A DNA stretch of 64,000 nucleotides from Octopus bimaculoides. Lineage: Eukaryota. Position 1 is the first letter of the stretch. Each line of letters begins with the position of its first letter. The position numbers and the translations under genes are program-made. The DNA lies in NCBI RefSeq assembly GCF_001194135.2, contig NC_068989.1, forward strand, positions 70,011,286 to 70,075,285, read 5' to 3'. Of this stretch, positions 8,791-57,856 are shown in pieces. The notes below the pieces were generated by a model. The model saw only the letters and a list, made by a program, of their open reading frames with translations. It had not been told where the DNA came from and did not search any database.

Positions 8791-9589
8791 TGAGAAATTG
8801 TTAAATTATACAAAGAAAAAATAGATTTAAATTACAAAACTGTCTTTTACTGTTACTTTATGATGTGAATTTTAAGCTTAATCTGCTGTTCTGTATTCTG
8901 TGTTCAAATTTCACTGAAGTTGATTCAATCAACTACAAAAATTGGCTTAGTTGAAAGAAAGCAATCAATCAATAAAGAGAAAACTTTTTTAACAAAACAT
9001 TTGTTTTGGTAACAAAATGAATTGATTTTGGAGCTTTTGCTATGCACATTTACATTTCAAAACTGCTTCTATAAAAAAGATTTTTTTTCAGACATTTTAG
9101 CAATGGTTTTGTCTAGGTCTATTGACTAGCATTTGAATTATTTTTCACTCTACATATGGAATAATTTATTTTATTCATATTGTAAAACCCAGCTAAATGT
9201 TATGCAGTTGAAGATTTTAGTCTCAGCAGATTTGAAGTTTTTTGTCATGGTTATTATATTGTTCTACACTCAGGCACCACAGTATTCTACTTGATATTTA
9301 GTGTGGGTCATCAGAGACAATTGTTAGCATTCTGATATAATTTTGGTGATTTGAGCCATAGAATACATTCAGTTGCATAAGACTTTTAAGAACAGGTAAA
9401 TGCTTGAATTTTCACAGGCAGCTTTCAATTCTTGCAAAACATGGAATAGATTTTTTCTTTTTAGGAAAAAACTATAAGTATAGAACTTGAATAATTTTTG
9501 TCACTGATTTTCTAAAAAGAAAATAATAATAATTACAGAATATGAAATCTTATTTATTAATATATTTATTTTTTTTGTTTCTATTTCAG

Positions 9590-9764
9590 CTGAGAGATAT
9601 GTCATATTTCATCATCATCTTATTCATAGTTTTAATCAGTTTTGGAATAGTGCGACAAGCTGTACACTATCAACATGAAGATCCTTCCTGGCACATTGCA
9701 CGCAATGTCTTCTTTTATCCATACTGGATGATCTATGGAGAATTGTTTGCTGAAGAAATAGATC
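9590..9764 (+). CDS. TRPM3: TRPM1/3-like channel exon (S5, pore helix, selectivity filter)
   Basis: tttcag acceptor, GAT C|gtaagt donor (phase 0/1). LRDMSYFIIILFIVLISFGIVRQAV...FFYPYWMIYGELFAEEID matches TRPM SFGV.RQAI and PYWMIYGEVFA. Confidence 0.96.
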
Positions 9765-10449
9765 GTAAGTTAGCAATATTTTTTAAACCTATTTTTAAAA
9801 ATTTCTCTTGCTCAGCTTACATTATCTCGGTTTTAGTTAGATTTTTTTTCCTTACTGAATTCTAAAACTTACTACTAATGGTTTCAGAGCCACATCAAAT
9901 ACATAGTGCTTTAAAATCAAGTACCACACTTTACTATACAGAGAAATGTTGTTTTTTTTTTTCACTCTTCTCCTGAACTTTGATTAGATGAGGGAAACAA
10001 CAGTATGTTAAAAGTTATAAGTGGTAGTTCTGAATTATTCTGAGTTAATGATCACTTCTCAGAAAAAAGCTATTCGATAACTTTTTTTTTTTTTTGACTA
10101 TTGGTTTAGTATTGATTAATTGTCTTTTGAGGAGACAGTTTCTTTTTGGATTTAAAATTATGCAGATAATAATTATCTTGGAAATAAGTAGATTAAAGTT
10201 GTCATCATTATCGACATCATCATTTCAACATCTACTTTTCCATACTTGCATGGGTCAGATGAAATTCATTGCAGGAAATTTTCTCTGGCTCGATGCCCTT
10301 CCAGTTTCCAAGCTAGTTAATATTTTCCTGCAACCCTTCAAATACAAACACAATGGCTAGACATGTAGGCAAGAAAACACAAACACCCATGCATACATAA
10401 CTACATATATATATCTGACTATGTATGTATGTATACACACACACATATA

Positions 10450-11019: not shown

Positions 11020-11235
11020 TGATGCCATGTAAAAAGCACTGGTGCCAGTGTCACGTAAAAAGCACTGGTGCCAGTGTCACATAAAAAGCACTCAATACCC
11101 TCTGTAAAGTGGTTGGCATTAGGATGAGCATCCAGCTATAGAAACCATGCCAAAACAGACAGGTAGAGTCTGGTGCCTTAGCTGCTCCTATCAAACCATC
11201 CAACCCATGCCAGCATAAAAAACAGATAAGTGATG
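11020..11235 (-). repeat. SINE-like family D copy, reverse
   Basis: gtggttggcattaggatgagcatccagctatagaaacc...aaaccatccaacccatgccagcat is the reverse complement of the 10450-10640 head. Confidence 0.75.
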
Positions 11236-11318: not shown

Positions 11319-12472
11319 TTATATAGCTGTACATGTGTGTGTGTGTATATATATATATATATTTATATAGCTGCAATGTGTGTGTGTGTATATATATATG
11401 TGTGTGTGTATGTATGTAAATATATATGCATACATATATAGCTATGTATGTATTTATATGCACAAGGAAAATATTAATAGTATCTTCAACAATGTAATGA
11501 CAGTAAGTCAAAACTTGAAAATCACTGTCAACCTTTCCTTCTAAAATAAATAACTATGTTACTCTACTGAAAAGTATAGAGTGATCTTTCAGTTCAACAT
11601 TTGGCTGCTTTATATATAGCTTTACGTAAAAAAAAAAATCCATTAATTTGCATGAGCATGTTTGTGTTTTTACATTGGATGGGCTTCTTTTCAAAATGAC
11701 TTATACACACACACACACACGCATATATATATATATATATATATATATANNNNNNNNNNNNNNNNNNNNNNNNNNNNNNNNNNNNNNNNNNNNNNNNNNN
11801 NNNNNNNNNNNNNNNNNNNNNNNNNNNNNNNNNNNNNNNNNNNNNNNNNNNNNNNNNNNNNNNNNNNNNNNNNNNNNNNNNNNNNNNNNNNNNNNNNNNN
11901 NNNNNNNNNNNNNNNNNNNNNNNNNNNNNNNNNNNNNNNNNNNNNNNNNNNNNNNNNNNNNNNNNNNNNNNNNNNNNNNNNNNNNNNNNNNNNNNNNNNN
12001 NNNNNNNNNNNNNNNGCCTTTTAGCAGTTGAAATATGTCACAAACATATTTTAACTAACCTAAATTTTGCATATATATATATATCATCATCATCATCATT
12101 TAACATTTGTTTTCCATGCTGTCATGGGTTGGACGGTTTGACTGAGGACCTGCAAGCTAGTAGGCTGCACCAGGCTCCAATCTGATCTGGTAAGGTTTCT
12201 ACAGTTGGATTCCGTTCCTAAAGCCATCCACTCTGAGAGTGTAGTGGGTGCTTTTTACATGCCACTGGCATAGGAGCCAGTCATGGAGCACTGGCATCAA
12301 CCACGTTTGGATGGTACTTTTTATGTGCCACCAGCACAGTGCCAGTCAGGGGGCACTGGCATTGACCATATTCGGATGATGCTTTTTATGTGCCACCGGC
12401 ATGGGGAGCCAGTCAGGTAGCACTAGCATCGACCCATGCTCAAATGGTGCTTATTACGTGCCACCAGCATAG

Positions 12473-17420: not shown

Positions 17421-17649
17421 TTTCAATTGATAAATGTTTAAGAATTCTGTGGAAGAGCTGTCTAAGAAAGAAATCATTGAATAATATAAAAGAAAGTTGC
17501 TGGCTTGAATATTCAAAGGCTGTACTTGGTAGCCAGAAATCAAATTGAATCTTTCTTGAAGAATATCACAACCTTTGCTCTCCACTATGATATATATTCT
17601 ATTTATATATATCCATAAGTTTCATTTCTGTTCATTTTTCTTTTTGCAG

Positions 17650-17767
17650 CTTGTACCAATCCTGATATGGAATGCTCCTATGGTGCCTGGGTTGCTCCTG
17701 CTCTCATGTGTGTATATTTGCTCGTAGCTAACATTTTGTTAGTTAACCTACTTATTGCAAGATTCAA
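17650..17767 (+). CDS. TRPM3: TRPM1/3-like channel exon (outer pore loop, S6)
   Basis: ttgcag acceptor, TTC AA|gtaagt donor (phase 1/2). (P)[38 protein letters not shown](N) matches TRPM C..GAW..P.....[15 protein letters not shown]. Too short for the ORF track; found by reading. Confidence 0.95.
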
Positions 17768-17829
17768 GTAAGTTTATTTTAATTTATTATGATAACATAT
17801 CTATTATAAACTACACAATCTTCAAACTC

Positions 17830-19844: not shown

Positions 19845-20352
19845 TCCTTTTGTTACCAAATTTCAATTGAAATACATTGTTTATATTTCAATAAATTTTG
19901 AAAATAATGAAGAGTTTAGTAAAATAACTTTGTCCTTATTAAGTTAGTGTTCTGAACATAAACATGAAATTTTGTTACAAGGTTTTTAATTTAGATCAGG
20001 GGTTCTCTACCACTTTTTACCTATGGACTCCTTTGATTGCTATTTTGTTCTGGTGGACCCCCATAGCCATTCAATGTTTAAAGATACTTCTTTCAAAATT
20101 CCTATTTTGTTTTTCACACATTGCCTTGTGCAGATTGAACAATTTAAAACTTTAGAGAAGAAAATCCAAGCTGTTTCTTGCAGTACATACTAATATATAC
20201 ATCTGAAGCAAAATTTTTTTAGAGGCCTTTAAAATACAATTTGTTAAGTGGACCCCAAAAATCCTATATAGACCCCCAGTTGAGAACCACTGATTTAGAT
20301 CACTTTAAAAAGGGAAGTAGGGGCCATCTCAAGAATCTTGGTATCAAAAGGG
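19845..20352. mobile_element. piggyBac-like MITE family 1 (host of nested hAT MITE)
   Basis: TTAA at 19841-44 and 20353-56; termini tccttttgttacc / ggtatcaaaaggg. Confidence 0.8.
19997..20292. mobile_element. hAT (Charlie/Buster-like) MITE
   Basis: TIRs caggggttctctac / gttgagaaccactg; exact 8-bp TSD ATTTAGAT (19989-96, 20293-300). Confidence 0.92.
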
Positions 20353-20461
20353 TTAATTAAAATTGTTCATTTGTTAATTTTCTGAATTATTGTTTTTTAC
20401 AATTTGAAAAAAAAAAATCATATTCAACAGAATTTCTTTTTTTCTTTTTTCAATTTTTTAG

Positions 20462-20652
20462 TGCAACATTCATTCGCAATAATGCTAATTCCAGAGAAAT
20501 TTGGAAATTCCAACGATATCAGCTCATTATTGTATATGAGCTACGACCCCTTTTACCTCCACCTCTCATCTTACTCAGCCATTTATTCCTTACTTTAAAG
20601 TTTATCAAACGAAGGTGTCAGGGAAAACGAGATTATTTTGATAATGGCCTCA
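20462..20652 (+). CDS. TRPM3: TRPM1/3-like channel exon (TRP box and TRP helix)
   Basis: tttag acceptor, CTC A|gtaagt donor (phase 2/1). ATFIRNNANSREIWKFQRYQLIIVYELRPLLPPPLILLSHL...DNGL contains the TRP box IWKFQRY and the LPPP motif. Confidence 0.96.
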
Positions 20653-20744
20653 GTAAGTATTATTACCAAACTATATTAAATCTTTCAAATAAGCTATGCT
20701 TATGTTTCTGTTTCTCTCATTGAACCTTACTCATTAATAGTTTT

Positions 20745-25334: not shown

Positions 25335-26154
25335 NNNNNNNNNNNNNNNNNNNNNNNNNNNNNNNNNNNNNNNNNNNNNNNNNNNNNNNNNNNNNNNNNN
25401 NNNNNNNNNNNNNNNNNNNNNNNNNNNNNNNNNNNNNNNNNNNNNNNNNNNNNNNNNNNNNNNNNNNNNNNNNNNNNNNNNNNNNNNNNNNNNNNNNNNN
25501 NNNNNNNNNNNNNNNNNNNNNNNNNNNNNNNNNNNNNNNNNNNNNNNNNNNNNNNNNNNNNNNNNNNNNNNNNNNNNNNNNNNTATCATGGCTACTGAAT
25601 AAATGTCACATACTTTTACAGATAAATTCCTCTATTTACATAATATCGAGGTCTCTTTCTTTCTTTCTTTTGTTGTCCTTCCTATCTATATATCATCGTT
25701 TAACGTCCGCTTTCCATGCTAGCATGGGTTGGACGATTTGACTGAGGACTGGTGAAACCGGATGGCAACATCAGGCTCCAGTCTAATATATATATATATC
25801 TCAGTTGATAAACTGGAAAATAAGAATTCTTCACCATATTCCAAAATATTTGCTTCATCAATTGACCATCCTCAACTCCCTTTCCATTACATAAAACTGT
25901 TCTAATACATATGCGGGTTTGTTTGTTTAGAAAGAAAATAAGTATAAATTTTTAAAATGTCCAACTCAAAATTATCAACTAATTAAAAAAATTGATAATT
26001 ATTAAAAGAAAGATTTCAAAGAAAACATTTTGCATTACAATAAATTGTAAAGTATTTTGAGTGTATATTTTTTTTGAAATTTATTGTGTTTCTAAACTTG
26101 AAAGAAAATTACTACTTTTTTTCTTTTTTCTTTTTTTGTGTATGTATTATACAG

Positions 26155-26287
26155 AACTATTCTTATCACATGAGGATACTGAAAAATTACATGCCTTTGA
26201 AGAAGAGAATGTTGAAGATTACTTTAGAGAGAAAGACAGCAAATTTCAATCTAGCACAGATGAACGTATTCGAGTAATAAGTGATAG
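26155..26287 (+). CDS. TRPM3: TRPM1/3-like channel exon (C-terminal rib helix)
   Basis: atacag acceptor, GAT AG|gtgagt donor (phase 1/2). (K)LFLSHEDTEKLHAFEEENVEDYFREKDSKFQSSTDERIRVISD(R) matches TRPM3 KLF....K.H.FEE...E.YFREK....S.DERIRVT.ER. Confidence 0.95.
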
Positions 26288-27601
26288 GTGAGTGGTATTT
26301 TAACTATGCGTTTTTGGGTGGAAGAAATTTTTTTTTTAAATCGAAGTACATGATCATCACACCATCATCACCACCATTACCACCACCACCATCATCATAT
26401 CTCCTTTCTATGCTGGCATGAGTTGGATAGGTTGTCTTGGTTCGAGTCAGTCTCCTATTGGAAGCTTACTGCTCCTTAAGTTCAAGTGCTCATACACAAC
26501 ATTTGGTTTGATTTCTATGGTTGGATCCACTTTCTAATACCACCCACTTTACAGAGTGTACTGGGTTCATTTTTGTCATTGCACTAATGCTAGAGAGGTT
26601 CACCAGTTCTTGGTGAGACAGGACTAGAGGGACCTCTCATAACCCTATACTTTCTCTAGTCCTACAGCCATACTTTTCTGAGAAAAACCTACATTGTCAT
26701 CATCATTTAAAGTCCATATTCCATGCGTATGTGTTTGTGTCTTTCCATTTTCCTGACATTGTTTGCACATTATGTACACTATGTCATTGCTTGAGTCTGC
26801 GACAAAAGGCATGTCTAGCTGTCTGGGCACTATGCGAAAAAGCAACAGTGTTTTTGTTTACATCTGTCCCAAAAACAGGTTGAGTCATCAAGTTGCTTGT
26901 CATTTGAAAGCCAAGCCCAAGGGAAATAGCCACCCCTGGGTTGCTACTGGAAACAATGAGGGTTGGTGACAGGAAGAGCATCAAGTTATAAAAAAAGACT
27001 TCCCCTAACAAATCTAATCTGACCTATTCTAGCATGGAAAAAGTGGGCCTTAAAATTGATGATGGTAGTGGTAGTGGTTATCAATGTTGTTGTCATCGCC
27101 ATTTCAAAAATAATAATAATGATGATGATGAATTCTCCCATCAAAGACGACGTATGAGTGATAAGCTTTTGCTGAATGACATGCACAAAATGATTTGTTT
27201 GTAGTGATCAAATGTTCATGTCACACATTAGATCACTCGCTCCATCAAATTGACATTGTCTGAACAGGTGCACTGTGAGCCACACGTCAGATGTTGAAGT
27301 GATCGCAGAGCAATGTGAGATGAAGTGTTTTGCTCAAGAACACAACACGCCACCCAGTCTAGGAACTGAAACCACGGTTTAGCGATCATGAGTGCAACAC
27401 CCTAACCACTAAGCCATTCGCCCTCACATAATAATAATAATAACGATAATAATTCTTGCTACTAAAAGTACAAGGTCTGAAATTTTGATAGGAGGAGACT
27501 AGTTGATTACATCAACCCCAGTATTTCACTGGTACTTAATTTATTGACCCCGAAAGGATAAAAGGCTAAGTTAACCTCGGCGGAAATATAATAATAATAA
27601 T

Positions 27602-28095: not shown

Positions 28096-28168
28096 CTCTC
28101 ACTCATTGATAATAATGTTTTTCCTCTCAGATAAATCAGAAATTAATTTTTATTATTTTATTTTGCAG

Positions 28169-29654
28169 GGTTGATAATATCACAACACGCATGGAAGACA
28201 TGTATACCAAAGAGAATGCAATAAAACTGTCTCACCAAACTATTGATTATAGATTAAGTAGGTTAGAAGAAATTGCTGCCCAGATGGGTGACTCTCTTGC
28301 TGTTATAGAGGAAGTTATAACAACCGAGCGGAATCCAGTCTTCTCTGATGCAGACACAAACATAGACTATACCAGTGATGAATCTCTTCAACCAACGGAA
28401 GATAACAGTAGTCCAAAAACCACTTACCCTCAGAAAGATCAACTCGCAGCACCTTCATTATTTAGACCGAGTTTATCTAAAAGAGGTAGTGTTTCAAATC
28501 GTATGTGTAGACTTTCTGATCATCGACCATCATTGCTAAGCAAAAGAAGCCCATCTATTGGTTTAAAACGTTCTTGGAGTCTTTGTAGCCGTAGCCCTAA
28601 ATTTGCCAACACCAGTCCTTTACAAATGAAACGGCCGTCTCTTTTCCAGTTTCATGACGCCATGCAGAAAGCAGCTTTGCAGAACCATGATATAGATGCT
28701 ACAGATGAATCTAGTTCTAATGCAAACATGTCAAAATTACAGAAACGGCGTAACGTCACTGCAAACCTACATGTCAACTTACGGCCGGAAGAAGTCCAAG
28801 AGGACTGTTTTAATTCCAATAACTCTCCTCCAAATGTATCACCAACATCATGTAATGCTCCTTCAGTGAAATTCAATGAAGCATTACCAGAGAAAAGTGT
28901 TTACAGCACTGCTCCCATTGAGTCTGATACTCGCACTGCTACCTTAGTTCCTGGCAAAACTATGACTCTTGATCTCTTGAAGCCAAAAGATACTCAATTT
29001 AATCGTGATGCTGAAAGCCAATCTGGTGCTATCATTGGTCACACACCAGTTTCCCCTCTTGACACCCCAAATTCGCCATCGAGTAGTGTTACGTTCGGTT
29101 GCTTCAGTGTGTATGAGAAATACCAAGCAGGGACCTCCGCCGGCCAAATGCCATCTCTTTTAACTTCTTTGAATCCAGAATATACAACCATTACAGATGA
29201 TATCGATACGTCATACTTAATGGAAACGTCTAGTCCCGCAACAAGTAGTATATTTTTTTCCGATCAAGATGAGAAATATTTCTGGAACAATGAAGAAAAA
29301 GCGTTGAAACAAGCAGAAGAAGTCGAACACCATCGAATGGAACGGGTCATTCGCAACCGGTTGCGTCAGATTTCACTTGATGATACCGATAGCATTAGTG
29401 ACATTGCCAAAATTGTGGTCTCTGAAATGGAAGGTAACCAAAAGCACACACCACCTGATGCAGTTGTGGATGTCGACGAAGAGGATATAACACTTGTAAA
29501 CAGACCTGCATGTATACCGCAGGTCACGGTAGAGAATAAAGACTTTAAAAGCTCTTCTGTTGATAGATCCTTAAAAAATATCGAAATCAAAGTCATTCGT
29601 GCATCCATTGACAAAGGCAGTAGCTGCGACAGTGATCGAGACCCACAATGTTAA
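28169..29654 (+). CDS. TRPM3: TRPM1/3-like channel terminal exon (tetramerisation coiled coil + long low-complexity tail, TAA stop)
   Basis: ttgcag acceptor, phase 2, joins in frame to the 487-aa ORF at 28191-29654. VDNITTRMEDMYTKENAIKLSHQTIDYRLSRLEE is the TRPM coiled coil; EYTTITDDIDT resembles the TRPM3 tail motif EYTSITDCIDT. Confidence 0.93.
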
Positions 29655-29718
29655 TTATTCACTGTTTTAGGTGAGGCTTCGTTATTTTACATGTATTATT
29701 AAAATGTATCTATTTGTC

Positions 29719-38679: not shown

Positions 38680-39380
38680 GAGATAAAAGAGCATGGCTGG
38701 ATACACTTATGTGCCTTTTCTGAAAATTTAGTATGGTACCAGCACAATCCAGGTTGTCTTCCAGAAGCTGAACGACCACGACTTGAGAGCGGGAACGAGC
38801 GCGGGAAAAAGGCTTGTTATCCGGCATAGAGCGTCCAACTGACGCGTGAGCTCTTCTAGTTTATCAGCAATGGCGTCATACGACAAGGAAGAGGATCAGG
38901 CTGCTGAAGTGGCCTCAGAACATAGACAGGCACCGCGTGAAGGTTGGCCGGAAAATTCTAGGATTTTATCGGCCAAGATTGTCCGCACGTCCGAAGGCAA
39001 TCTCGAAAAGAAAATTTTACGCAGAAGAGGAGTGTCAGTTGAATCTCCGCTCAACTCGCATAAGTGGCGTAAAAATTCTGACGGAGTTCTATCTCCCAAT
39101 TGCTCATCCGCCATGACCTCATTGAATCTGCTCTCAGCAGACTTGGTGTAACGACGTAAAATCTCCGCTTTTACGGAGATATTAGTGGCGTCAGGACTGG
39201 GAGACGTGACTAAATCCCTGGCGGAGGTGGAGAGTTGCAACGGCAAGTCACAATACAACAACTGTAACTGCTTTGAGGTAGGAATACCATGTGTGTCAAA
39301 ATATGCCTCCAATTGAGCAAACCACAAGGTTGCGTCACCTGTGAATGAAGGTAACATGTGGGAGAGCATAGTTCCTATCG
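38680..39380 (-). pseudogene. Gypsy gag relic
   Basis: LPSFTGDATLWFAQLEAYF...LGDRTPSEFLRHL...LLRKIFFSRLPSDVRTIL, then frameshifted CWYHTKFSEKAHKCIQPCSF, typical of this Gypsy gag group. Confidence 0.88.
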
Positions 39381-39873
39381 AAAACATGATTCCACCAAAG
39401 GAAAAAAAAAAGGAAAGAGACAATGAACAGAAGGTTCTCGTATATAAGATACGTGGACAGCAAAAGGAGTCCACCAAAGAAAAAAACGAAATTTTCTTTT
39501 TCGTGTTTTTTTTTTTGTATTGAAGTGTACACAGGAGAAAGAGAGAAAGAAAAAAATTTTTGTAAAGAAAAACAATGTGTTTGCCTTTTTTTTTTCCTCA
39601 GAGTGTGTGTGTGTGTGTGTGTGTTGCTTTTGTGTACTGTATGCAGGAACAAAATATCACCAACCTTGTCGCGCCGAAAGGTAAATATNNNNNNNNNNNN
39701 NNNNNNNNNNNNNNNNNNNNNNNNNNNNNNNNNNNNNNNNNNNNNNNNNNNNNNNNNNNNNNNNNNNNNNNNNNNNNNNNNNNNNNNNNNNNNNNNNNNN
39801 NNNNNNNGAGCCGAAAGGTAAATATAACAATAAAACAGGGTAGAAAGTTAAATGTGTGCGAGTCTGTCTAGCA

Positions 39874-40120
39874 CAGGGCTTTTCAAACTGTGGTCCGCAA
39901 GGACAAGACAGGGGGTCCGTGGACAGCAAATACTTTTTATGGGCAATTTGATTTTATATATGTTTTTTAATCGAAATCTTTTAATTGACAATAAACCTAT
40001 TTGTTAAATACTGTTAAATAAATAAATGTAAAAATATATGTTATTTTAAGCAACTATTTATGTATAAATTTCATAAGCGTTTATAAGGGGTCCGCAAGTC
40101 AAAAGGTTTGAAAACCCTTG
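39874..40120. mobile_element. hAT MITE nested in the Gypsy leader
   Basis: TIRs cagggcttttcaaact / ggtttgaaaacccttg; exact 8-bp TSD GTCTAGCA (39866-73, 40121-28). Confidence 0.92.
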
Positions 40121-45597: not shown

Positions 45598-46069
45598 ATA
45601 TAAATTGAACATGGGCTACCATTGTATTCTTTCTTGTCTCGAGGTTCACGGCCAAACGGCTGGGGTGGATTCGCGTGAAAAATGGCACACATGTGGAGAC
45701 GGATGCATAGATTGGAACGCGCTTTGTATTTTTTCCTAGCCCCCATAGTTACCGACAAAATCGATTAAAACAACCTGCGTGCGTGTATGTGAGTGCACAT
45801 ATATATATCAAGAAAAATGGATCAAGAGTCCTTTCCGAGTCATAGGCTCATAAACCGGGACAGGACGCCGGTCCGTCACTGGATTACTCATTTTTGCCAT
45901 TGAGTGGATTGGAACAACGTGAAATGAAGTGTTTTACTCAAGACTACAACGCCTCGTCTGGTCCAGGTGTTGAAACCATAATCTTACCATGACGAATGCA
46001 ATACTCTAAACACTAAGCCACACACGCACACACACACACACACACATTTAAATACACAGNNNNNNNNNN

Positions 46070-46168: not shown

Positions 46169-46253
46169 GGGGAGAGAGAGATGACAAATTGTTTTCCTCG
46201 CTGCATAAATATTTATCGTTACTTTATAAATGCGCCATAGTAAAGGTGCGTAG

Positions 46254-46390
46254 CTTAGTGGTTAGAGTGTTGGACCCATGATAGTAAAATTGTGGTTTCA
46301 ATTCCTAGACCGAGCGATGCATTGTGTTCTTCAGAAAAACACTTCATTTCACGGTGGTCCAGTCCACTCGACTGGCAAAAATGAGTATTC
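46254..46390 (+). repeat. SINE family B head
   Basis: ggtgcgtagcttagtggttagagtg...ggtttcaattcc...cacttcatttcacg...ctggcaaaaatgagta. Confidence 0.7.
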
Positions 46391-46679
46391 CGGCGACGGA
46401 AACCGGTAAACTGGTAAACCAGTCACATGAGACGATAAAACTCGAGAAGAAGCTTTATCCTATTATCGTCCCATGTATTTAATATACTACAACAAACTTA
46501 ACAAAATTCACCTATTAAAAAAATAAAGTACTGGGCTCGATTCTTCAAAGCGGTGCCCCAGCAAGGCCACAGTCTAATGACAGAAACAAGTAAAGGGTAG
46601 AATATATTAAGGTTTATCGAATAATCCTTGACTTTTATGGTGCTTCAGGCTGTATATCATCACTATAGTCAATTTTAAG

Positions 46680-46885
46680 GCGGCGAACTGGCAGAACCGT
46701 TAGCATACCGTACGAAATTCTTAGTGGCATTTCGTCCAGCTTTACGTTCTGAGCTCAATTTCAACCGATGTCGACTTTGTCTTTTATCCTCTGAGGGTCA
46801 ATAGAATAAGCACCAGTCAAGTATTGAAGTCGATGTAATTGACTTTCCCCTCTCCTCAAAAATTGCTAGTCCTGTCCTGGAATTT
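46680..46885 (+). repeat. tRNA-derived SINE family C copy
   Basis: ggcggcgaactggcagaaccgttagc...ttacgttctgagctcaatttc...gtcgactttg...gatgtaattgact...aatttgaaac; related copies at 48273-48460 and 24690-24890. Confidence 0.75.
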
Positions 46886-47282
46886 GAAACTATTACGATA
46901 ACCAATTTTCTGATTGGGTGGTTTTTCTTTTATAATATTGTATTAATTCATCTAGTTTTATTATTCTATATATTGAATAGTTGTTTTATTTAACGATTCA
47001 TTTTCTTGGGTAATTCAATTCCCCACATCGTCTTCTATCACACATCCACTACAACTTTACACTGGTAGATTGATAAAACACCAAGTTTACTATATTTAAT
47101 GAAACAGAAAATGTTTTAACTCAAGTGATGTTGTATGAATCTGAAAATATTTTTTGTTGTATCTGTGGAAAATAATTGGATTTTGTAAGGGTGATAAAAA
47201 ATCATACAGTTAATCATAAATTTGAAGAACTTACGGTCAATGTCCTTTAAGAGTACACGAAGGGTAAGAGAATTCGTTAAGT

Positions 47283-48273
47283 TAGTGGTTCTCAGGCTGA
47301 ATGACGGGAACTAAGCCAATGTTTTCAGTGTCAACGAGAAGAAAGAGATATTCTTAAACCAGTTGTTCCGAGCTTCGATAAGACAAAAGAAAGGTCTTTA
47401 GGGCAAAGGTTCTCAGGTTGAATGAGAGGAAATAAAAGTCCTAGGGACAGTTTGCATGACAGAAACAAGAACCCTGAAGCCAGTGGGTCTCATGGTAAAC
47501 GAAAGGAAAGAGAACTCTTGGGACCAGTGGATCTTAAAGTGAACAAGAGGAAAAAAGACTCGTGTGGTCATTAGGTCTCAGGTTGAATTGGAGGAAAGCG
47601 ATAACTTCTGGCTAATGGATCTCAAGTTGAACAAGAAGAAAGAGAAGTTCTGAAGCTAGTTACAGTGGATCACAGTTTGAATGAGTAGTCCTTAGCACAG
47701 TAGTTTTCCTTTTGACCAAGAATAAAGAAAATTCGTCAGGACAGTGGTTCCTAGTTCTGCCGAGAGGATGAATTTGTTCTTAGGGCAGTAGCTGTCAGTT
47801 TAAACGAGAGGAAATAGGAGTCATGAAGCAAGTGGCTGTCCTGGTTAACTGAAAGAAAAATAATGAGGGTAGTGTTTCTCAGATAAAGGAATCCTGAGGC
47901 CAGTAGTTGTCAAGTAGAACGAAAGAAAGGAAATGGAAGTTCTTAGGACAGTTCTTTTCAACTTACACAACAGAAAAGAGGAATCCTGAAGCCAATGATT
48001 CTCAGATCAAATGCGAAGACAGCGAAGTTCTTAGACCAGTGGTTTTCAGGTTGATTGTGAATGAATAAGAACCATAAGAGGAAAAATGAATCCATGTGAT
48101 AGTGGTTCTAAAGTTGGATGCGAGAAAATTGAATCCTTGAGAAATGGTTCTCAAGTTAACCGGGAGGAAAGGGAAGTTCGTATGTCAGTTGTTCTCCGGT
48201 CGAATGAAAGAAAAGAGGCGTCCTTAAACCAGTGCTTCTCAAACTGAATGAGAAACAAGATGAGCCCTGAAGC
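47283..48273. repeat. Degenerate 44-bp tandem array (~23 units)
   Basis: CAGTGGTTCTCA-like motif recurs at 47360/47404/47448, 47481/47525/47569/47613, 47742/47786/47830, 47949/47993/48037 and 48142/48186/48230. Confidence 0.85.
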
Positions 48274-50293
48274 ACACCGGGCAAAATACTTAGCGGCATT
48301 TTGTCCGTCTTCACGTTCTGAATTCAAATTATGTCGAGGTAGACTTTGCCTCTTATCCTTTCAGGGTTGATAAGATAAGTGCCAGTTGAACACTGGGATC
48401 GATGTAATCGACTTATTCCCGGCCCGAAATTGCTGGCTTTGTGTCAAAATTTGAAACCGTTATTATAATTATCATCGGAAGTTATTGTTATTATCATCTG
48501 CAGTTCATGGCTTTGGCATAAAAAATAAACCAGTTAAAACTTTCCTCTTACAACCAAACAATATCCCACTAATCATTTGTAGAACTGATATCAACGTATG
48601 GGATGCTTGACTGACCTGTAAAGGAAATCTGCTCCATATATATTAAACCCCGCAGGGTCCTGACATTTAGTGCAAACCTCTGTAGAAACAATAGAAACAA
48701 TCACTGCTTCGAAATTTGCAGCCTATTTACTCTGCTTATAAATTCACATTTACACCTCTAATTATTTGTGCACTTTATTATTATTATTATTAATTGTTTA
48801 AAAGACAATCTGGTAAAGGTCGTATTTTCAATCAAGAAGGAGACACGCACTTTACACAATCTTTAGGTGGAACAGCAAAAACATGCAAGACTTTTCTAAA
48901 GTTCAACACGTAGTACTTGTTGTTGTTATTATCCAACGATGGAGCTTTATTTCTTTCTTGCAAATTCTTAGAAACCAAGTCCTTCTTTGTAAGAAGAATT
49001 CTAATGATTAAAAACAAAAAGATGCACACACACTTATATACGCACACACACACACATATTTGTATCCTCTATTATTCTATCTTTTAATGGTGAATATGAT
49101 CACTCTGCTGTATTTTCAAACTATATTACTTGAGGCACTGCAAGTTATTTTTGATCGACTATATCGACTCCAGCGCTTATTTAAGTCTATTTCTATATTT
49201 TCTGAATTCACAATTTAAAACAATCACATCATTGACTCGATACACACATACATACATACATACATACATACAAACATACATACATACATACATACATACA
49301 CACGCACGCACACAAACACACACACACATACACACCTATGTATATGTATATATATCGTGCAAATGTACAAAAAAAGACAAAAGACAGACGGGTGTGGGGA
49401 CAACAAATAAGGTGTACTAGTTTGACGCTCAGGAAAAATAGAAAAGTCTTTGACATTTCGAGCCTATTCTCTTCATATAAACAATCTATATTTCTACTGA
49501 ACTTTTGTCCATTTAATTTATATCTTCACGGATAAATTAATGTTTTAATTAGTTAATCTTAATTTAAATGCTAACACATGAGCTGTCAATGTCGTGTAGT
49601 TAGGAAATTCGTTTTTCAATCATGTATTTCTGGGTTCGGACCGGTGCGGCTTTGGTTGTTCAGCGCACATAAAAACTTAAATTTGTCAGCTCAACACAAT
49701 CCTTACTTTCCTGGATAACTTTTAAATTTTTAGGGATACAAATTCAGTACTACAATTATAGCTGTCTCAAGCTACCTATGACCCTACTCTCTATATATAA
49801 TTTGAGAAACAAGCCTCTATCCGTGTTGTGTGTCGCTAATTTTCTCTTCTACTTCTGTCTATCACGTCTTCCATTTTCTCAATGAATCATTTCTCATGCG
49901 TTTCTGTCCTCCGCACATGCTTATATATCAATATCGAAAGACTGTATTTCATATGACATCTTTCAGCGCCAGTAAATGTTTTCGTACTACCACTACTATC
50001 ACCAATACTACAACCATCACCACTACTACTGCACCATTCCCACTATCATTATCGTGAACGTGACATCATTGTACAGCATGACAGATGTATATGATTATGG
50101 TATTAATTGTAACACTAGGCAGTAGTGATAGTGAAAAGTACTCACACTCGTTTTTACATCCCTTCTCTTTTTTTATTCTTCCATACAGGTTTTTTCTCTA
50201 TCACACATGCATACACACATACATATCAACGCGTGCAAATGTGTGTCAATGTGACTTGTTTCACGCTACATGCATGTCAAGAATTGCTTCAAT

Positions 50294-56865: not shown

Positions 56866-57856
56866 ATCACCGCAAAGTGAAAATATTTGCTGATGACACT
56901 AAGCTCCAGCAAATCATCAATGAAGAAGACCGAACTCAACTCCAGTCTGATCTATATGCTGTGAGTCAATAGGCAGATAAAAACAAAATGAAACTGAACG
57001 AGGGAAAATTTGAGCTGATGCATTTTGGAAGAAAGTCTATACTAAAACAGCCATACTCTCTTCCTTCAGGGGAACAGCTCACGGCATCTAATACTATCAG
57101 AGATCTAGGTGTAATTGTTGATAACAATCTCAGTTGGAGTGCCCACATCAACAATAAGTTCGATATAGCTCGCAGGATGAGCTCCTGGATCTTAAAAACC
57201 TTACGGTCCAGAGAACAAGGTGTCATCATTCCACTTTTCTCCTTTGTAAGGCCACACCTCGAATACTGCTGCACCTTGTGGTCTCCCCATACAAAACAAA
57301 ACATCTCGAGGATTGAATCGGGCACTCATTAAACGAATTGAAGGCATGACTGATCTCAATTACTGGGATCTCCTTAAAGCCTCGAAACTCTACTCTCTCC
57401 AATGCCGCCGCAGGCGGTACATCATTTGTACGATGTGGAGAATATACCACCAGCATTGCCCAAACGACCTGAACATTAGTTTCAAGGTCATCCAGGGCTG
57501 GGACCACGGGCCATACGTCCCCTACCCAATTCAGGATCACAACATATAGGTACACTGCGACATAATTTCTTTTCCTCAACAGGCCCTGCCCTGTTTAACA
57601 TTGTCCCAAAACTGATCAAAGAGGAAAAGGATCTCATCACCTTTAAACGGAGTCTGGACAGATTTCTTCAAGGAATACCAGAAAAGCCACCCATACCTGG
57701 ATACAACTCACTCAACAAGAACTCACTACTTGAATGAACCATAAACAAAACTTGACTTAAAAGGATTTAGATAATCCTATCAGGTGGTGCTATTAAGTTA
57801 GACATGGCCTGGACCAATCTTTGGTCGAAACATATCTAAGTTTTATCTAAGTTTTA
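56866..57856 (+). mobile_element. CR1-type LINE 3' part (RT domain to tail); 5' part probably in the N gap
   Basis: KVKIFADDTKL...LQSDL...*ADKNKMKLNEGKFELMHFG...IRDLGVIVDNNLSWSAHI...FVRPHLEYCCTLWSP...KLYSLQCRRRRYII; premature TAG near 56970 and frameshifts; ends in a tctaagtttta tandem tail. Confidence 0.9.

What the first reader, a model, noticed from the sequence alone, without database searches (positions are those of the whole stretch)
47283..48273. 44-bp periodic array whose unit looks like a hAT transposon end plus its target site
Seen: about 23 units over ~990 bp keep a 44-bp spacing in five separate runs while diverging heavily by substitution. Each unit has a conserved head (CAGTGGTTCTCA[A/G]G-like), a variable purine-rich middle, and a conserved TCTTAG(G)AC/CCTTAAAC-like end. 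The head matches the terminal repeat of the hAT MITE in this window (cagtggttctcaac, reverse complement of the 20279-20292 end); unit 23 reads cttaaac|cagtgcttctcaaac. The sequence before each head resembles the central-TA 8-bp targets of the two hAT MITEs here (ATTTAGAT, GTCTAGCA). Inference: an old satellite amplified from a transposon-end/target junction, which could act as a transposase-binding sink, an integration hotspot or a small-RNA source. The repeat/variable layout is superficially CRISPR-like, but the middles are homologous to each other. Period 44 is not a multiple of 3, so it is not a coding repeat.
Basis: partly seen in the sequence, partly recalled or inferred. Interest (0 to 1): 0.7.

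Follow-up and report, generated by a model that had tools for sequence, protein, structure and literature searches.

The report
Decayed minisatellite seeded by hAT transposon end
A 1-kb stretch of about 23 worn-down 44-bp repeats most likely grew from the junction between a hAT transposon end and its insertion site; it now looks like an inert fossil, an ordinary kind of transposon-derived minisatellite.

Summary
The array is real. Window 47283-48273 has a 44-bp period (autocorrelation z=11.4) with about 23 same-strand units, too divergent for TRF (units 56% identical to each other, about 71% to consensus). The hAT resemblance also holds. The first 12 nt of the consensus (CAGTGGTTCTCA) equal the end of the hAT MITE at 19997-20292 (P≈0.001 against shuffles) and the published SPIN/Charlie-type hAT TIR. 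The 8 nt just before each head is the best of all 44 phases for the published target motif NYYTARRN. The "conserved head, variable middle, conserved end" layout is not real: under unbiased registration, head 70%, middle 67%, tail 55%. Unit similarity does not fall with distance. There is no sub-repeat, inverted partner array, flanking hAT end or TSD, Rfam hit, RNA structure (z≈0), long ORF or internal TE insertion. A 5'-truncated SINE abuts the 3' edge. Best reading: one old tandem amplification of a hAT-end/target junction, then neutral decay. The transposase-sink, integration-hotspot and small-RNA ideas have no support. TE-end-derived tandem repeats are a known class, so interest is low to moderate.

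The parts
47283..48273 (+). Degenerate 44-bp minisatellite, about 23 head-to-tail units. Consensus CAGTGGTTCTCAGGTTGAATGAGAGGAAAGAGAAGTCCTGAGGC. The + strand is 61% purine.
   Evidence: Autocorrelation z=11.4 at lag 44; 21 head hits, all on the + strand; unit table and alignment; 20 profile hits with E<1 inside the array.
47262..47282 (+). Possible partial unit (middle plus tail, GGTAAGAGAATTCGTTAAGT) leading into the first head. Its last 8 nt, CGTTAAGT, are one mismatch from NYYTARRN.
   Evidence: Local alignment to the consensus is not significant (P=0.10); weak profile hit 47250-47281 with E=15. Tentative.
48271..48478 (+). SINE copy lacking about 25 nt of its 5' end, abutting the last array unit with a 3-nt overlap (AGC). 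It marks the 3' boundary of the array.
   Evidence: 74% identical to the fuller copy at 46679-46905 (D12, 10). No array-like sequence lies beyond it (P=0.97).
46679..46905 (+). Fuller copy of the same SINE family, about 380 bp upstream of the array. An independent insertion, not part of the array.
   Evidence: (D12).
19997..20292 (.). Comparator: hAT MITE with TSD ATTTAGAT and ends CAGGGGTTCTCTAC / CAGTGGTTCTCAAC. Its right end is the best match to the array profile anywhere outside the array.
39874..40120 (.). Comparator: second hAT MITE with TSD GTCTAGCA and ends CAGGGCTTTTCAAA / CAAGGGTTTTCAAA.

Best explanation
This is a fossil minisatellite born at a hAT insertion junction. Proposed steps, each marked as shown or inferred. 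(1) A hAT element with the SPIN/Charlie/Buster-type end CAGTGGTTCTCA... inserted at a typical NYYTARRN target (inferred from the unit's tail plus head). (2) A segment of about 44 bp spanning the flank/TSD-TIR junction was duplicated in tandem, by replication slippage or by misaligned gap repair after excision (inferred). (3) It expanded to at least 23 copies in one early phase. Shown: unit similarity does not depend on distance, and there is no higher-order repeat. (4) The rest of the parent element was lost. The 3' edge now abuts a 5'-truncated SINE with no target duplication, which suggests a deletion (partly shown). (5) Since then the units have decayed independently and neutrally, by about 0.29 differences per site from consensus (about 0.37 substitutions per site after Jukes-Cantor correction), with indels breaking the register at about nine places. 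The array now has no detectable sequence-level function. It is much older than the two intact hAT MITEs in the window, whose TSDs are still perfect.
For: The periodicity and the unit alignment are real. The head matches a hAT end 12/14, P about 0.001 against both shuffled consensus and random window 44-mers. The best profile hit outside the array is exactly the MITE terminus 20292-20279. The same 12-mer begins the published hAT TIRs CAGYGGTTCTCAACCT and CAGTGGTTCTCAACCTGTGG, whose TSD is NYYTARRN (PMC3014272). Offset -8 is the top phase of 44 for NYYTARRN. Mean pairwise unit identity is 0.56, and stays flat from 0.571 for units under 50 bp apart to 0.545 for units over 600 bp apart. Lags 16, 22 and 28 sit at baseline. 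Head and middle are equally conserved. Tail variants are not linked to the rest of the unit. There is no Rfam family, no fold signal and no ORF over 58 aa. TIR-derived tandem repeats are a documented class (PMC9659126; PMC12368964). A young tandem duplication containing the same TIR exists in an unrelated metagenome contig (L002).
Against: No parent hAT element or second end with a matching TSD adjoins the array. Only 12 nt of the TIR match, and positions 13-16 differ. The key T of the target motif is T in 8 units and G in 10, so the ancestral 8-mer may have been one mismatch off. Copy number elsewhere in the genome is unknown. Neutrality is inferred from the decay pattern within this one locus, not from comparison between species.
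Confidence: 0.6

Rival explanations
1. The array is one arm or an internal or subterminal repeat block of a larger, multi-copy non-autonomous element. An example of the type is the cod hAT-derived MITEs, whose 600-bp TIRs are built of tandem repeats. On this view the units diverged inside the element family rather than in place.
For: hAT-derived MITEs with tandem-repeat TIRs, and a derived repeat-only subfamily, are documented (PMC12368964), as are Tetris and Xstir. The region is rich in TEs. The head is TIR-like.
Against: No inverted partner array or minus-strand unit occurs anywhere in the 64 kb. No hAT-type end plus TSD brackets the array. The flanks are not array-like. The TSD-like 8-mer before every head is explained more simply by an insertion junction. 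Genome-wide copy number could not be tested.
Confidence: 0.2
2. This is an ordinary old minisatellite with no transposon ancestry, and the head/TIR and tail/target resemblances are coincidence.
For: Only 12 nt plus a degenerate 8-mer match. The resemblance was found post hoc. As a blind search the profile hit on the MITE end has E=0.95. Head positions 7-14 (TTCTCAGG) also fit NYYTARRN within one mismatch in 12 units (offsets +6 and +7), so that motif is not very specific in this sequence.
Against: Two independent tests both point the same way: P about 0.001 for the head, and 1/44 to about 0.05 for the target phase, giving a joint probability of about 2-5e-5 before any look-elsewhere correction. 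The 12-mer is a canonical, widely conserved hAT terminus.
Confidence: 0.13
3. The array is functional: a multi-site binding platform for a hAT transposase or a domesticated hAT-derived protein, a piRNA or small-RNA source, or a cis-regulatory block downstream of the TRPM-like gene.
For: There are about 23 same-strand copies of a transposase-recognition-like motif. Each unit carries a strongly purine-rich tract. The array lies about 17.6 kb downstream of a gene.
Against: No unit keeps the perfect 12-mer. The head is no more conserved than the middle. The register is broken by indels. There is no structure signal, no Rfam hit and no TE insertion inside the array. Expression could not be tested.
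Confidence: 0.05

Closest known systems
TIR-derived tandem repeats of DNA transposons (Xstir from the Xmix MITE TIR in Xenopus; TIR-220 arrays of the Tetris foldback element in Drosophila virilis), as tabulated in PMC9659126
   Same: A head-to-tail array whose monomer carries the terminal-repeat sequence of a class II element. The origin is by local tandem amplification of a transposon end.
   Different: Those repeats are multi-copy, relatively homogeneous, and found inside or next to recognisable parent elements. This array is a single visible locus, about 1 kb long, with units only 56% identical and no parent element attached. Its unit also seems to include the flanking target site, not only element sequence.
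Atlantic cod gadMor-hAT-1784/8043: hAT-derived MITEs with about 600-bp TIRs built of 167-169-bp tandem repeats (PMC12368964)
   Same: hAT ancestry and a tandem-repeat organisation that involves the element ends.
   Different: The cod units are 167-169 bp, form inverted arms, are young and similar to each other, and are multi-copy. Here the period is 44 bp, there is no inverted arm in 64 kb, and decay is heavy.
SPIN/Charlie-type (Buster-group) hAT elements and their MITEs: TIR CAGYGGTTCTCAACCT, TSD NYYTARRN (PMC3014272, Table 1)
   Same: The first 12 nt of the unit are identical to the TIR, and the 8 nt before it fit the family's target consensus. Two intact MITEs of this type lie in the same window.
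   Different: The array is not a transposon: it has no second inverted end and no flanking 8-bp duplication. The match stops after position 12.
Classical minisatellite / VNTR
   Same: Unit length of 10-100 bp, an array of about 1 kb, non-coding, and strand-asymmetric purine richness.
   Different: It is far more degenerate than typical polymorphic VNTRs and shows no sign of continuing turnover.

Membership tests
TE-end-derived minisatellite/satDNA | Head-to-tail tandem array with a statistically supported period | tested here: met
   Lag 44 z=11.4 and lag 88 z=8.3; 23 units aligned.
TE-end-derived minisatellite/satDNA | Monomer homologous to a transposon terminus | tested here: met
   12/14 match to the MITE end, P about 0.001; identical 12-mer in published hAT TIRs; adjacent 8-mer fits the target consensus NYYTARRN at the correct phase.
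TE-end-derived minisatellite/satDNA | Physical association with a parent element, or intermediate forms | tested here: not met
   No hAT end or TSD brackets or adjoins the array. Loss of the parent element is inferred, not shown.
Satellite DNA in the strict sense | High genomic copy number or many loci | not testable with these tools
There is only one locus in the 64 kb, and there were no metagenome hits to the unit.
Satellite DNA in the strict sense | Homogenisation of monomers (concerted evolution) | tested here: not met
   Mean pairwise identity is 0.56 and neighbours are no more alike than distant units.
hAT transposon / MITE (the array as an element) | Terminal inverted repeats at both ends plus an 8-bp target-site duplication | tested here: not met
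   The window-wide scan finds only the two MITEs. No minus-strand head with a matching TSD lies downstream. The 36-nt unit core has no inverted ends (read directly from the consensus).
Foldback element | Two inverted arms made of tandem repeats | tested here: not met
   All units are on the + strand, with no minus-strand cluster in the window and no array-derived inverted repeat.
CRISPR-like repeat/spacer array | Conserved repeats separated by unrelated spacers | tested here: not met
   The middles are homologous (67% to consensus). The context is eukaryotic, with spliced TRPM-like gene exons, SINEs and MITEs.
Small-RNA / piRNA source locus | Small RNAs mapping to the array, or hairpin/dsRNA potential | tested here: inconclusive
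   No fold signal on either strand (z=0.17 and 0.06) and no inverted arms. Read mapping was impossible.

The most novel reading that the evidence does not exclude
The array is a maintained multi-site landing pad or decoy for a hAT transposase or a domesticated hAT-derived DNA-binding protein, or a piRNA-generating trap against SPIN/Charlie-type hATs. In that case the repeated 'target + TIR' junction mimics a transposon end in its genomic context.
Probability: 0.04. Interest if true: 0.65.

Novelty: new member of a known kind. Interest (0 to 1): 0.25.

Why it matters
If the reading is right, this locus is a clean fossil showing that a tandem array can start from an insertion junction (target site plus transposon end) rather than from inside an element. 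That is a small addition to the known routes from transposons to tandem repeats. It would also show that SPIN/Charlie-type hAT ends were present in this lineage long before the intact MITEs now in the window. It does not open a new question. No function is indicated, and the class of TE-end-derived repeats is already well documented.

Tried and rejected
- TRF at minimum score 30 does not see the array, so autocorrelation and a profile were used instead.
- Sub-repeat within the unit (GTTCTYAGG occurring twice): lags 16, 22 and 28 are at baseline. Rejected.
- Higher-order 88-bp repeat: lag 88 is weaker than lag 44, and tail types are unlinked to the rest of the unit. Rejected.
- The array as the subterminal region of an intact hAT: no right end plus TSD. 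Rejected.
- A 36-bp micro-MITE inserted repeatedly into its own TSD (36+8=44): the unit core has no inverted ends. Rejected on reading the consensus.
- The array continuing beyond the SINE or further upstream: P=0.97 and P=0.10. Not supported.
- The 20-nt similarity 47194-47213 / 48518-48537 (D20): A-rich and does not extend. Treated as chance.
- The 6-nt inverted repeat CTCAGG/CCTGAG within the unit: expected by chance (roughly 0.2 per unit, by my own estimate), and there is no fold signal.
- Rfam: only sub-threshold microsatellite artefacts, none in the array.
- ORF look-ups for independent assemblies: not on record.
- Orthology through the nearest relative: L001 aligns only at exons and ends about 7 kb short of the orthologous position.
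- Metagenome scan for the unit: 0 hits. The two-heads-44-apart scan gave three loci, none of them a comparable array.
- A literature search for the SINE string found nothing, so the organism could not be named. From memory, untested, the SINE resembles octopod SINEs. The closest database proteins are only 55% identical and unnamed, and one weaker hit is from the bivalve Pinctada.
- A second protein search with a translated consensus array was considered and dropped. The consensus has no in-frame start and a stop every 44 codons, and the window's own species appears to be absent from the protein collection.

Full report
THE OBSERVATION. The sequence at 47283-48273 has a strong 44-bp periodicity. 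The self-match fraction is 0.439 at lag 44 and 0.393 at lag 88, against 0.269 +/- 0.015 for shuffles (z = 11.4 and 8.3). Tandem Repeats Finder at its most permissive score does not list the array, because the copies are too divergent. A search for CAGTGGTTCTCA with up to 3 mismatches gives 21 hits inside the array, all on the + strand, and no other cluster in the window. Cutting at the heads gives about 23 units, 14 of them exactly 44 bp. The rest are 31-63 bp because of indels, and five runs keep exact 44-bp spacing. The consensus is CAGTGGTTCTCAGGTTGAATGAGAGGAAAGAGAAGTCCTGAGGC. A profile built from the 14 clean units recovers 20 units at E<1 and finds nothing significant elsewhere in the window.

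WHAT IS NOT AS DESCRIBED. Phasing units on the head inflates head conservation. I therefore registered units on one block and scored the others. Identity to consensus is then 0.70 for the head (registered on the middle), 0.67 for the middle (registered on the head) and 0.55-0.57 for the tail. The whole unit is homologous, head and middle decay alike, and the tail is the least conserved part.

INTERNAL STRUCTURE AND AGE. Clean units are on average 56% identical to each other (range 36-70%) and about 71% identical to the consensus. Similarity does not fall with distance: 0.571 for neighbours and 0.545 for units more than 600 bp apart. Lags 16, 22 and 28 are at baseline, so there is no sub-repeat. 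Two tail variants occur, TTCTTAGG in 8 units and TCCTGARGC in 10. They are not linked to the rest of the unit (within-type identity 0.58, between-type 0.57) and do not alternate regularly, so there is no higher-order repeat. This is the pattern of one early amplification followed by independent decay without homogenisation. It amounts to about 0.29 differences per site from consensus, or about 0.37 substitutions per site after Jukes-Cantor correction (my calculation). The two intact hAT MITEs in the window still have perfect 8-bp target duplications, so they are much younger than the array.

THE hAT RESEMBLANCE. One is at 19997-20292, with TSD ATTTAGAT and ends CAGGGGTTCTCTAC / CAGTGGTTCTCAAC. 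The other is at 39874-40120, with TSD GTCTAGCA. I compared the consensus unit in every circular phase and on both strands with the four MITE ends. The best match is 12/14, with the first 12 nt contiguous and identical. Only 0.1% of shuffled consensus sequences, and 0.1% of random 44-mers from the window, do as well. The best hit of the unit profile outside the array is exactly that MITE terminus (20292-20279, profile positions 1-14). As a blind search it is not significant (E=0.95). The same 12-mer begins published hAT TIRs: SPIN_AC CAGYGGTTCTCAACCT and hAT-N1_AC CAGTGGTTCTCAACCTGTGG. Their target-site consensus is NYYTARRN (Novick et al. 2010, PMC3014272, Table 1).

THE TARGET-SITE TEST. That published motif allowed an objective test of the 'target site' claim. 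Among all offsets relative to the heads, the 8-mer immediately upstream (offset -8) ranks first. It has 6/22 perfect and 12/22 within one mismatch, and the lowest mean mismatch. The window-wide frequencies are 0.45% and 5.4%. Units share ancestry, so the binomial P-values printed are inflated. The fair figure is about 1/44 for 'best phase', or 0.005-0.05 for one ancestral 8-mer. I conclude that the unit most likely descends from a junction between a target site and a hAT end.

WHAT IT IS NOT.
- It is not an intact hAT or MITE. No second inverted end with a matching TSD exists, and the 36-nt core of the unit has no inverted ends.
- It is not a foldback element. There are no minus-strand units in the 64 kb.
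- It is not CRISPR-like. The middles are homologous and the context is eukaryotic.
- It is not coding. ORFs are 58 aa or shorter, and the consensus has stops in every + frame and one per 44 codons on the - strand.
- It matches no Rfam family.
- Neither strand folds better than shuffles, with z = 0.17 and 0.06.

SURROUNDINGS. The array lies about 17.6 kb downstream of the last exon (ORF 28191-29654, TRPM tetramerisation domain PF16519) of a TRPM-like gene on the + strand. The region is rich in TEs. A SINE copy lies at 46679-46905. A second copy at 48271-48478, 74% identical, lacks about 25 nt of its 5' end and abuts the last unit with a 3-nt overlap. Neither the sequence beyond that SINE nor the upstream flank is significantly array-like (P=0.97 and 0.10). 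So the array ends at the SINE, and no parent hAT sequence remains. A deletion that removed the SINE's 5' end together with whatever followed the array is a plausible cause, but this is inference.

MECHANISM. The steps are as follows, each marked as shown or inferred.
1. A SPIN/Charlie-type hAT inserted at an NYYTARRN site (inferred).
2. A segment of about 44 bp across the junction was duplicated, by slippage or by misaligned gap repair after excision (inferred).
3. It expanded to at least 23 copies in one early phase (shown by distance-independent similarity).
4. The rest of the element was lost (partly shown).
5. The units then decayed neutrally (shown within this locus).

THE PROPOSED FUNCTIONS. 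No unit keeps the perfect 12-mer head. The head is not preferentially conserved. No TE has inserted within the array, since the irregular units differ from 44 bp by 19 nt or less. NYYTARRN sites are only about twofold enriched in the array. These results argue against a present-day role as a transposase sink or an integration hotspot.

COMPARISON WITH KNOWN CASES. Tandem repeats derived from transposon ends are a documented class. Examples are Xstir from the Xmix MITE TIR, the Tetris TIR-220 arrays and pvB370 (review PMC9659126). Atlantic cod has hAT-derived MITEs whose 600-bp TIRs are built of 167-169-bp tandem repeats (PMC12368964). A metagenome scan for two heads 44 bp apart turned up a young 2-3-copy tandem duplication containing the same TIR in an unrelated contig (L002, 974-1064, 93% matches). 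This is an anecdotal precedent for step 2. The present case differs in four ways: it is a single visible locus, it is heavily decayed, it is detached from any parent element, and it includes the target site in its unit.

LIMITS. No eukaryote genome or repeat library was available, so genome-wide copy number and Dfam/Repbase identity are untested. The nearest relative reachable (L001) aligns only at exons, at 68-84% identity, and does not reach the orthologous position. The organism could not be named. The best protein hits are 55% identical and unnamed, and one weaker hit is from the bivalve Pinctada. From memory only, the SINE resembles octopod SINEs.

VERDICT. The array is real. Its origin from a hAT end plus target site is supported. 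Its proposed functions are unsupported. It is a new member of a known kind, a transposon-end-derived minisatellite. Interest is 0.25.

Noticed in passing
window 8251-29686 (+): A TRPM-like ion-channel gene. Exons align collinearly to a relative's contig (L001) at 9569-9771, 17643-17773, 20456-20658, 26153-26289 and 28158-29686. The last exon ORF, 28191-29654, carries the TRPM tetramerisation domain PF16519. The closest database relatives are only about 55% identical. The hAT MITE at 19997-20292 sits in one of its introns.
   Followed up: partly
window 46679-46905 and 48271-48478 (+): Two copies of one SINE family, 74% identical. The downstream copy is 5'-truncated exactly at the array edge, with a 3-nt overlap (AGC) and no clear target duplication. 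ARAGORN and Rfam find no tRNA in either copy.
   Followed up: partly
window 45891-46025 and 46246-46380: A 135-nt inverted pair, 76% complementary, of another tRNA-like or SINE-like repeat. It flanks CA and AGAT microsatellites and an assembly gap (N run at 46060-46069).
   Followed up: no
window 38896-39477 (-): A 193-aa ORF with DUF7041 (E=1e-8), probably a retroelement gag-like remnant. It lies next to the second hAT MITE (39874-40120).
   Followed up: partly
window 56988-57332 (+): A 114-aa ORF that reads like a reverse-transcriptase fragment of a non-LTR element. It has no Pfam hit at E<=0.01.
   Followed up: partly
window 12247-12469 and 11029-11092: A 65-bp tandem repeat (3.4 copies, 75% matches) and a 26-bp repeat (2.5 copies). 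They share a GTGCTTTTTAC / GTAAAAAGCAC core on opposite strands, and may be pieces of another repeat family.
   Followed up: no
array consensus positions 6-14 versus 33-42: The inner part of the TIR-like head (GGTTCTCAGG) resembles the tail or target region (AGTTCTTAGG). The head itself fits NYYTARRN within one mismatch in 12 units. There is no lag-16 or lag-28 signal, so this is not a sub-repeat. Whether the similarity means anything is unexplained.
   Followed up: partly
L002 974-1064 (metagenome contig JAAUYM010019872.1); L003 3811-3866; L004 449-504: L002 has a young 44-bp tandem duplication (2-3 copies, 93% matches) whose unit contains the hAT TIR CAGTGGTTCTCAACC. L003 and L004 carry the same repeated element, with two TIR-like heads 44 bp apart. 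These are unrelated organisms.
   Followed up: partly
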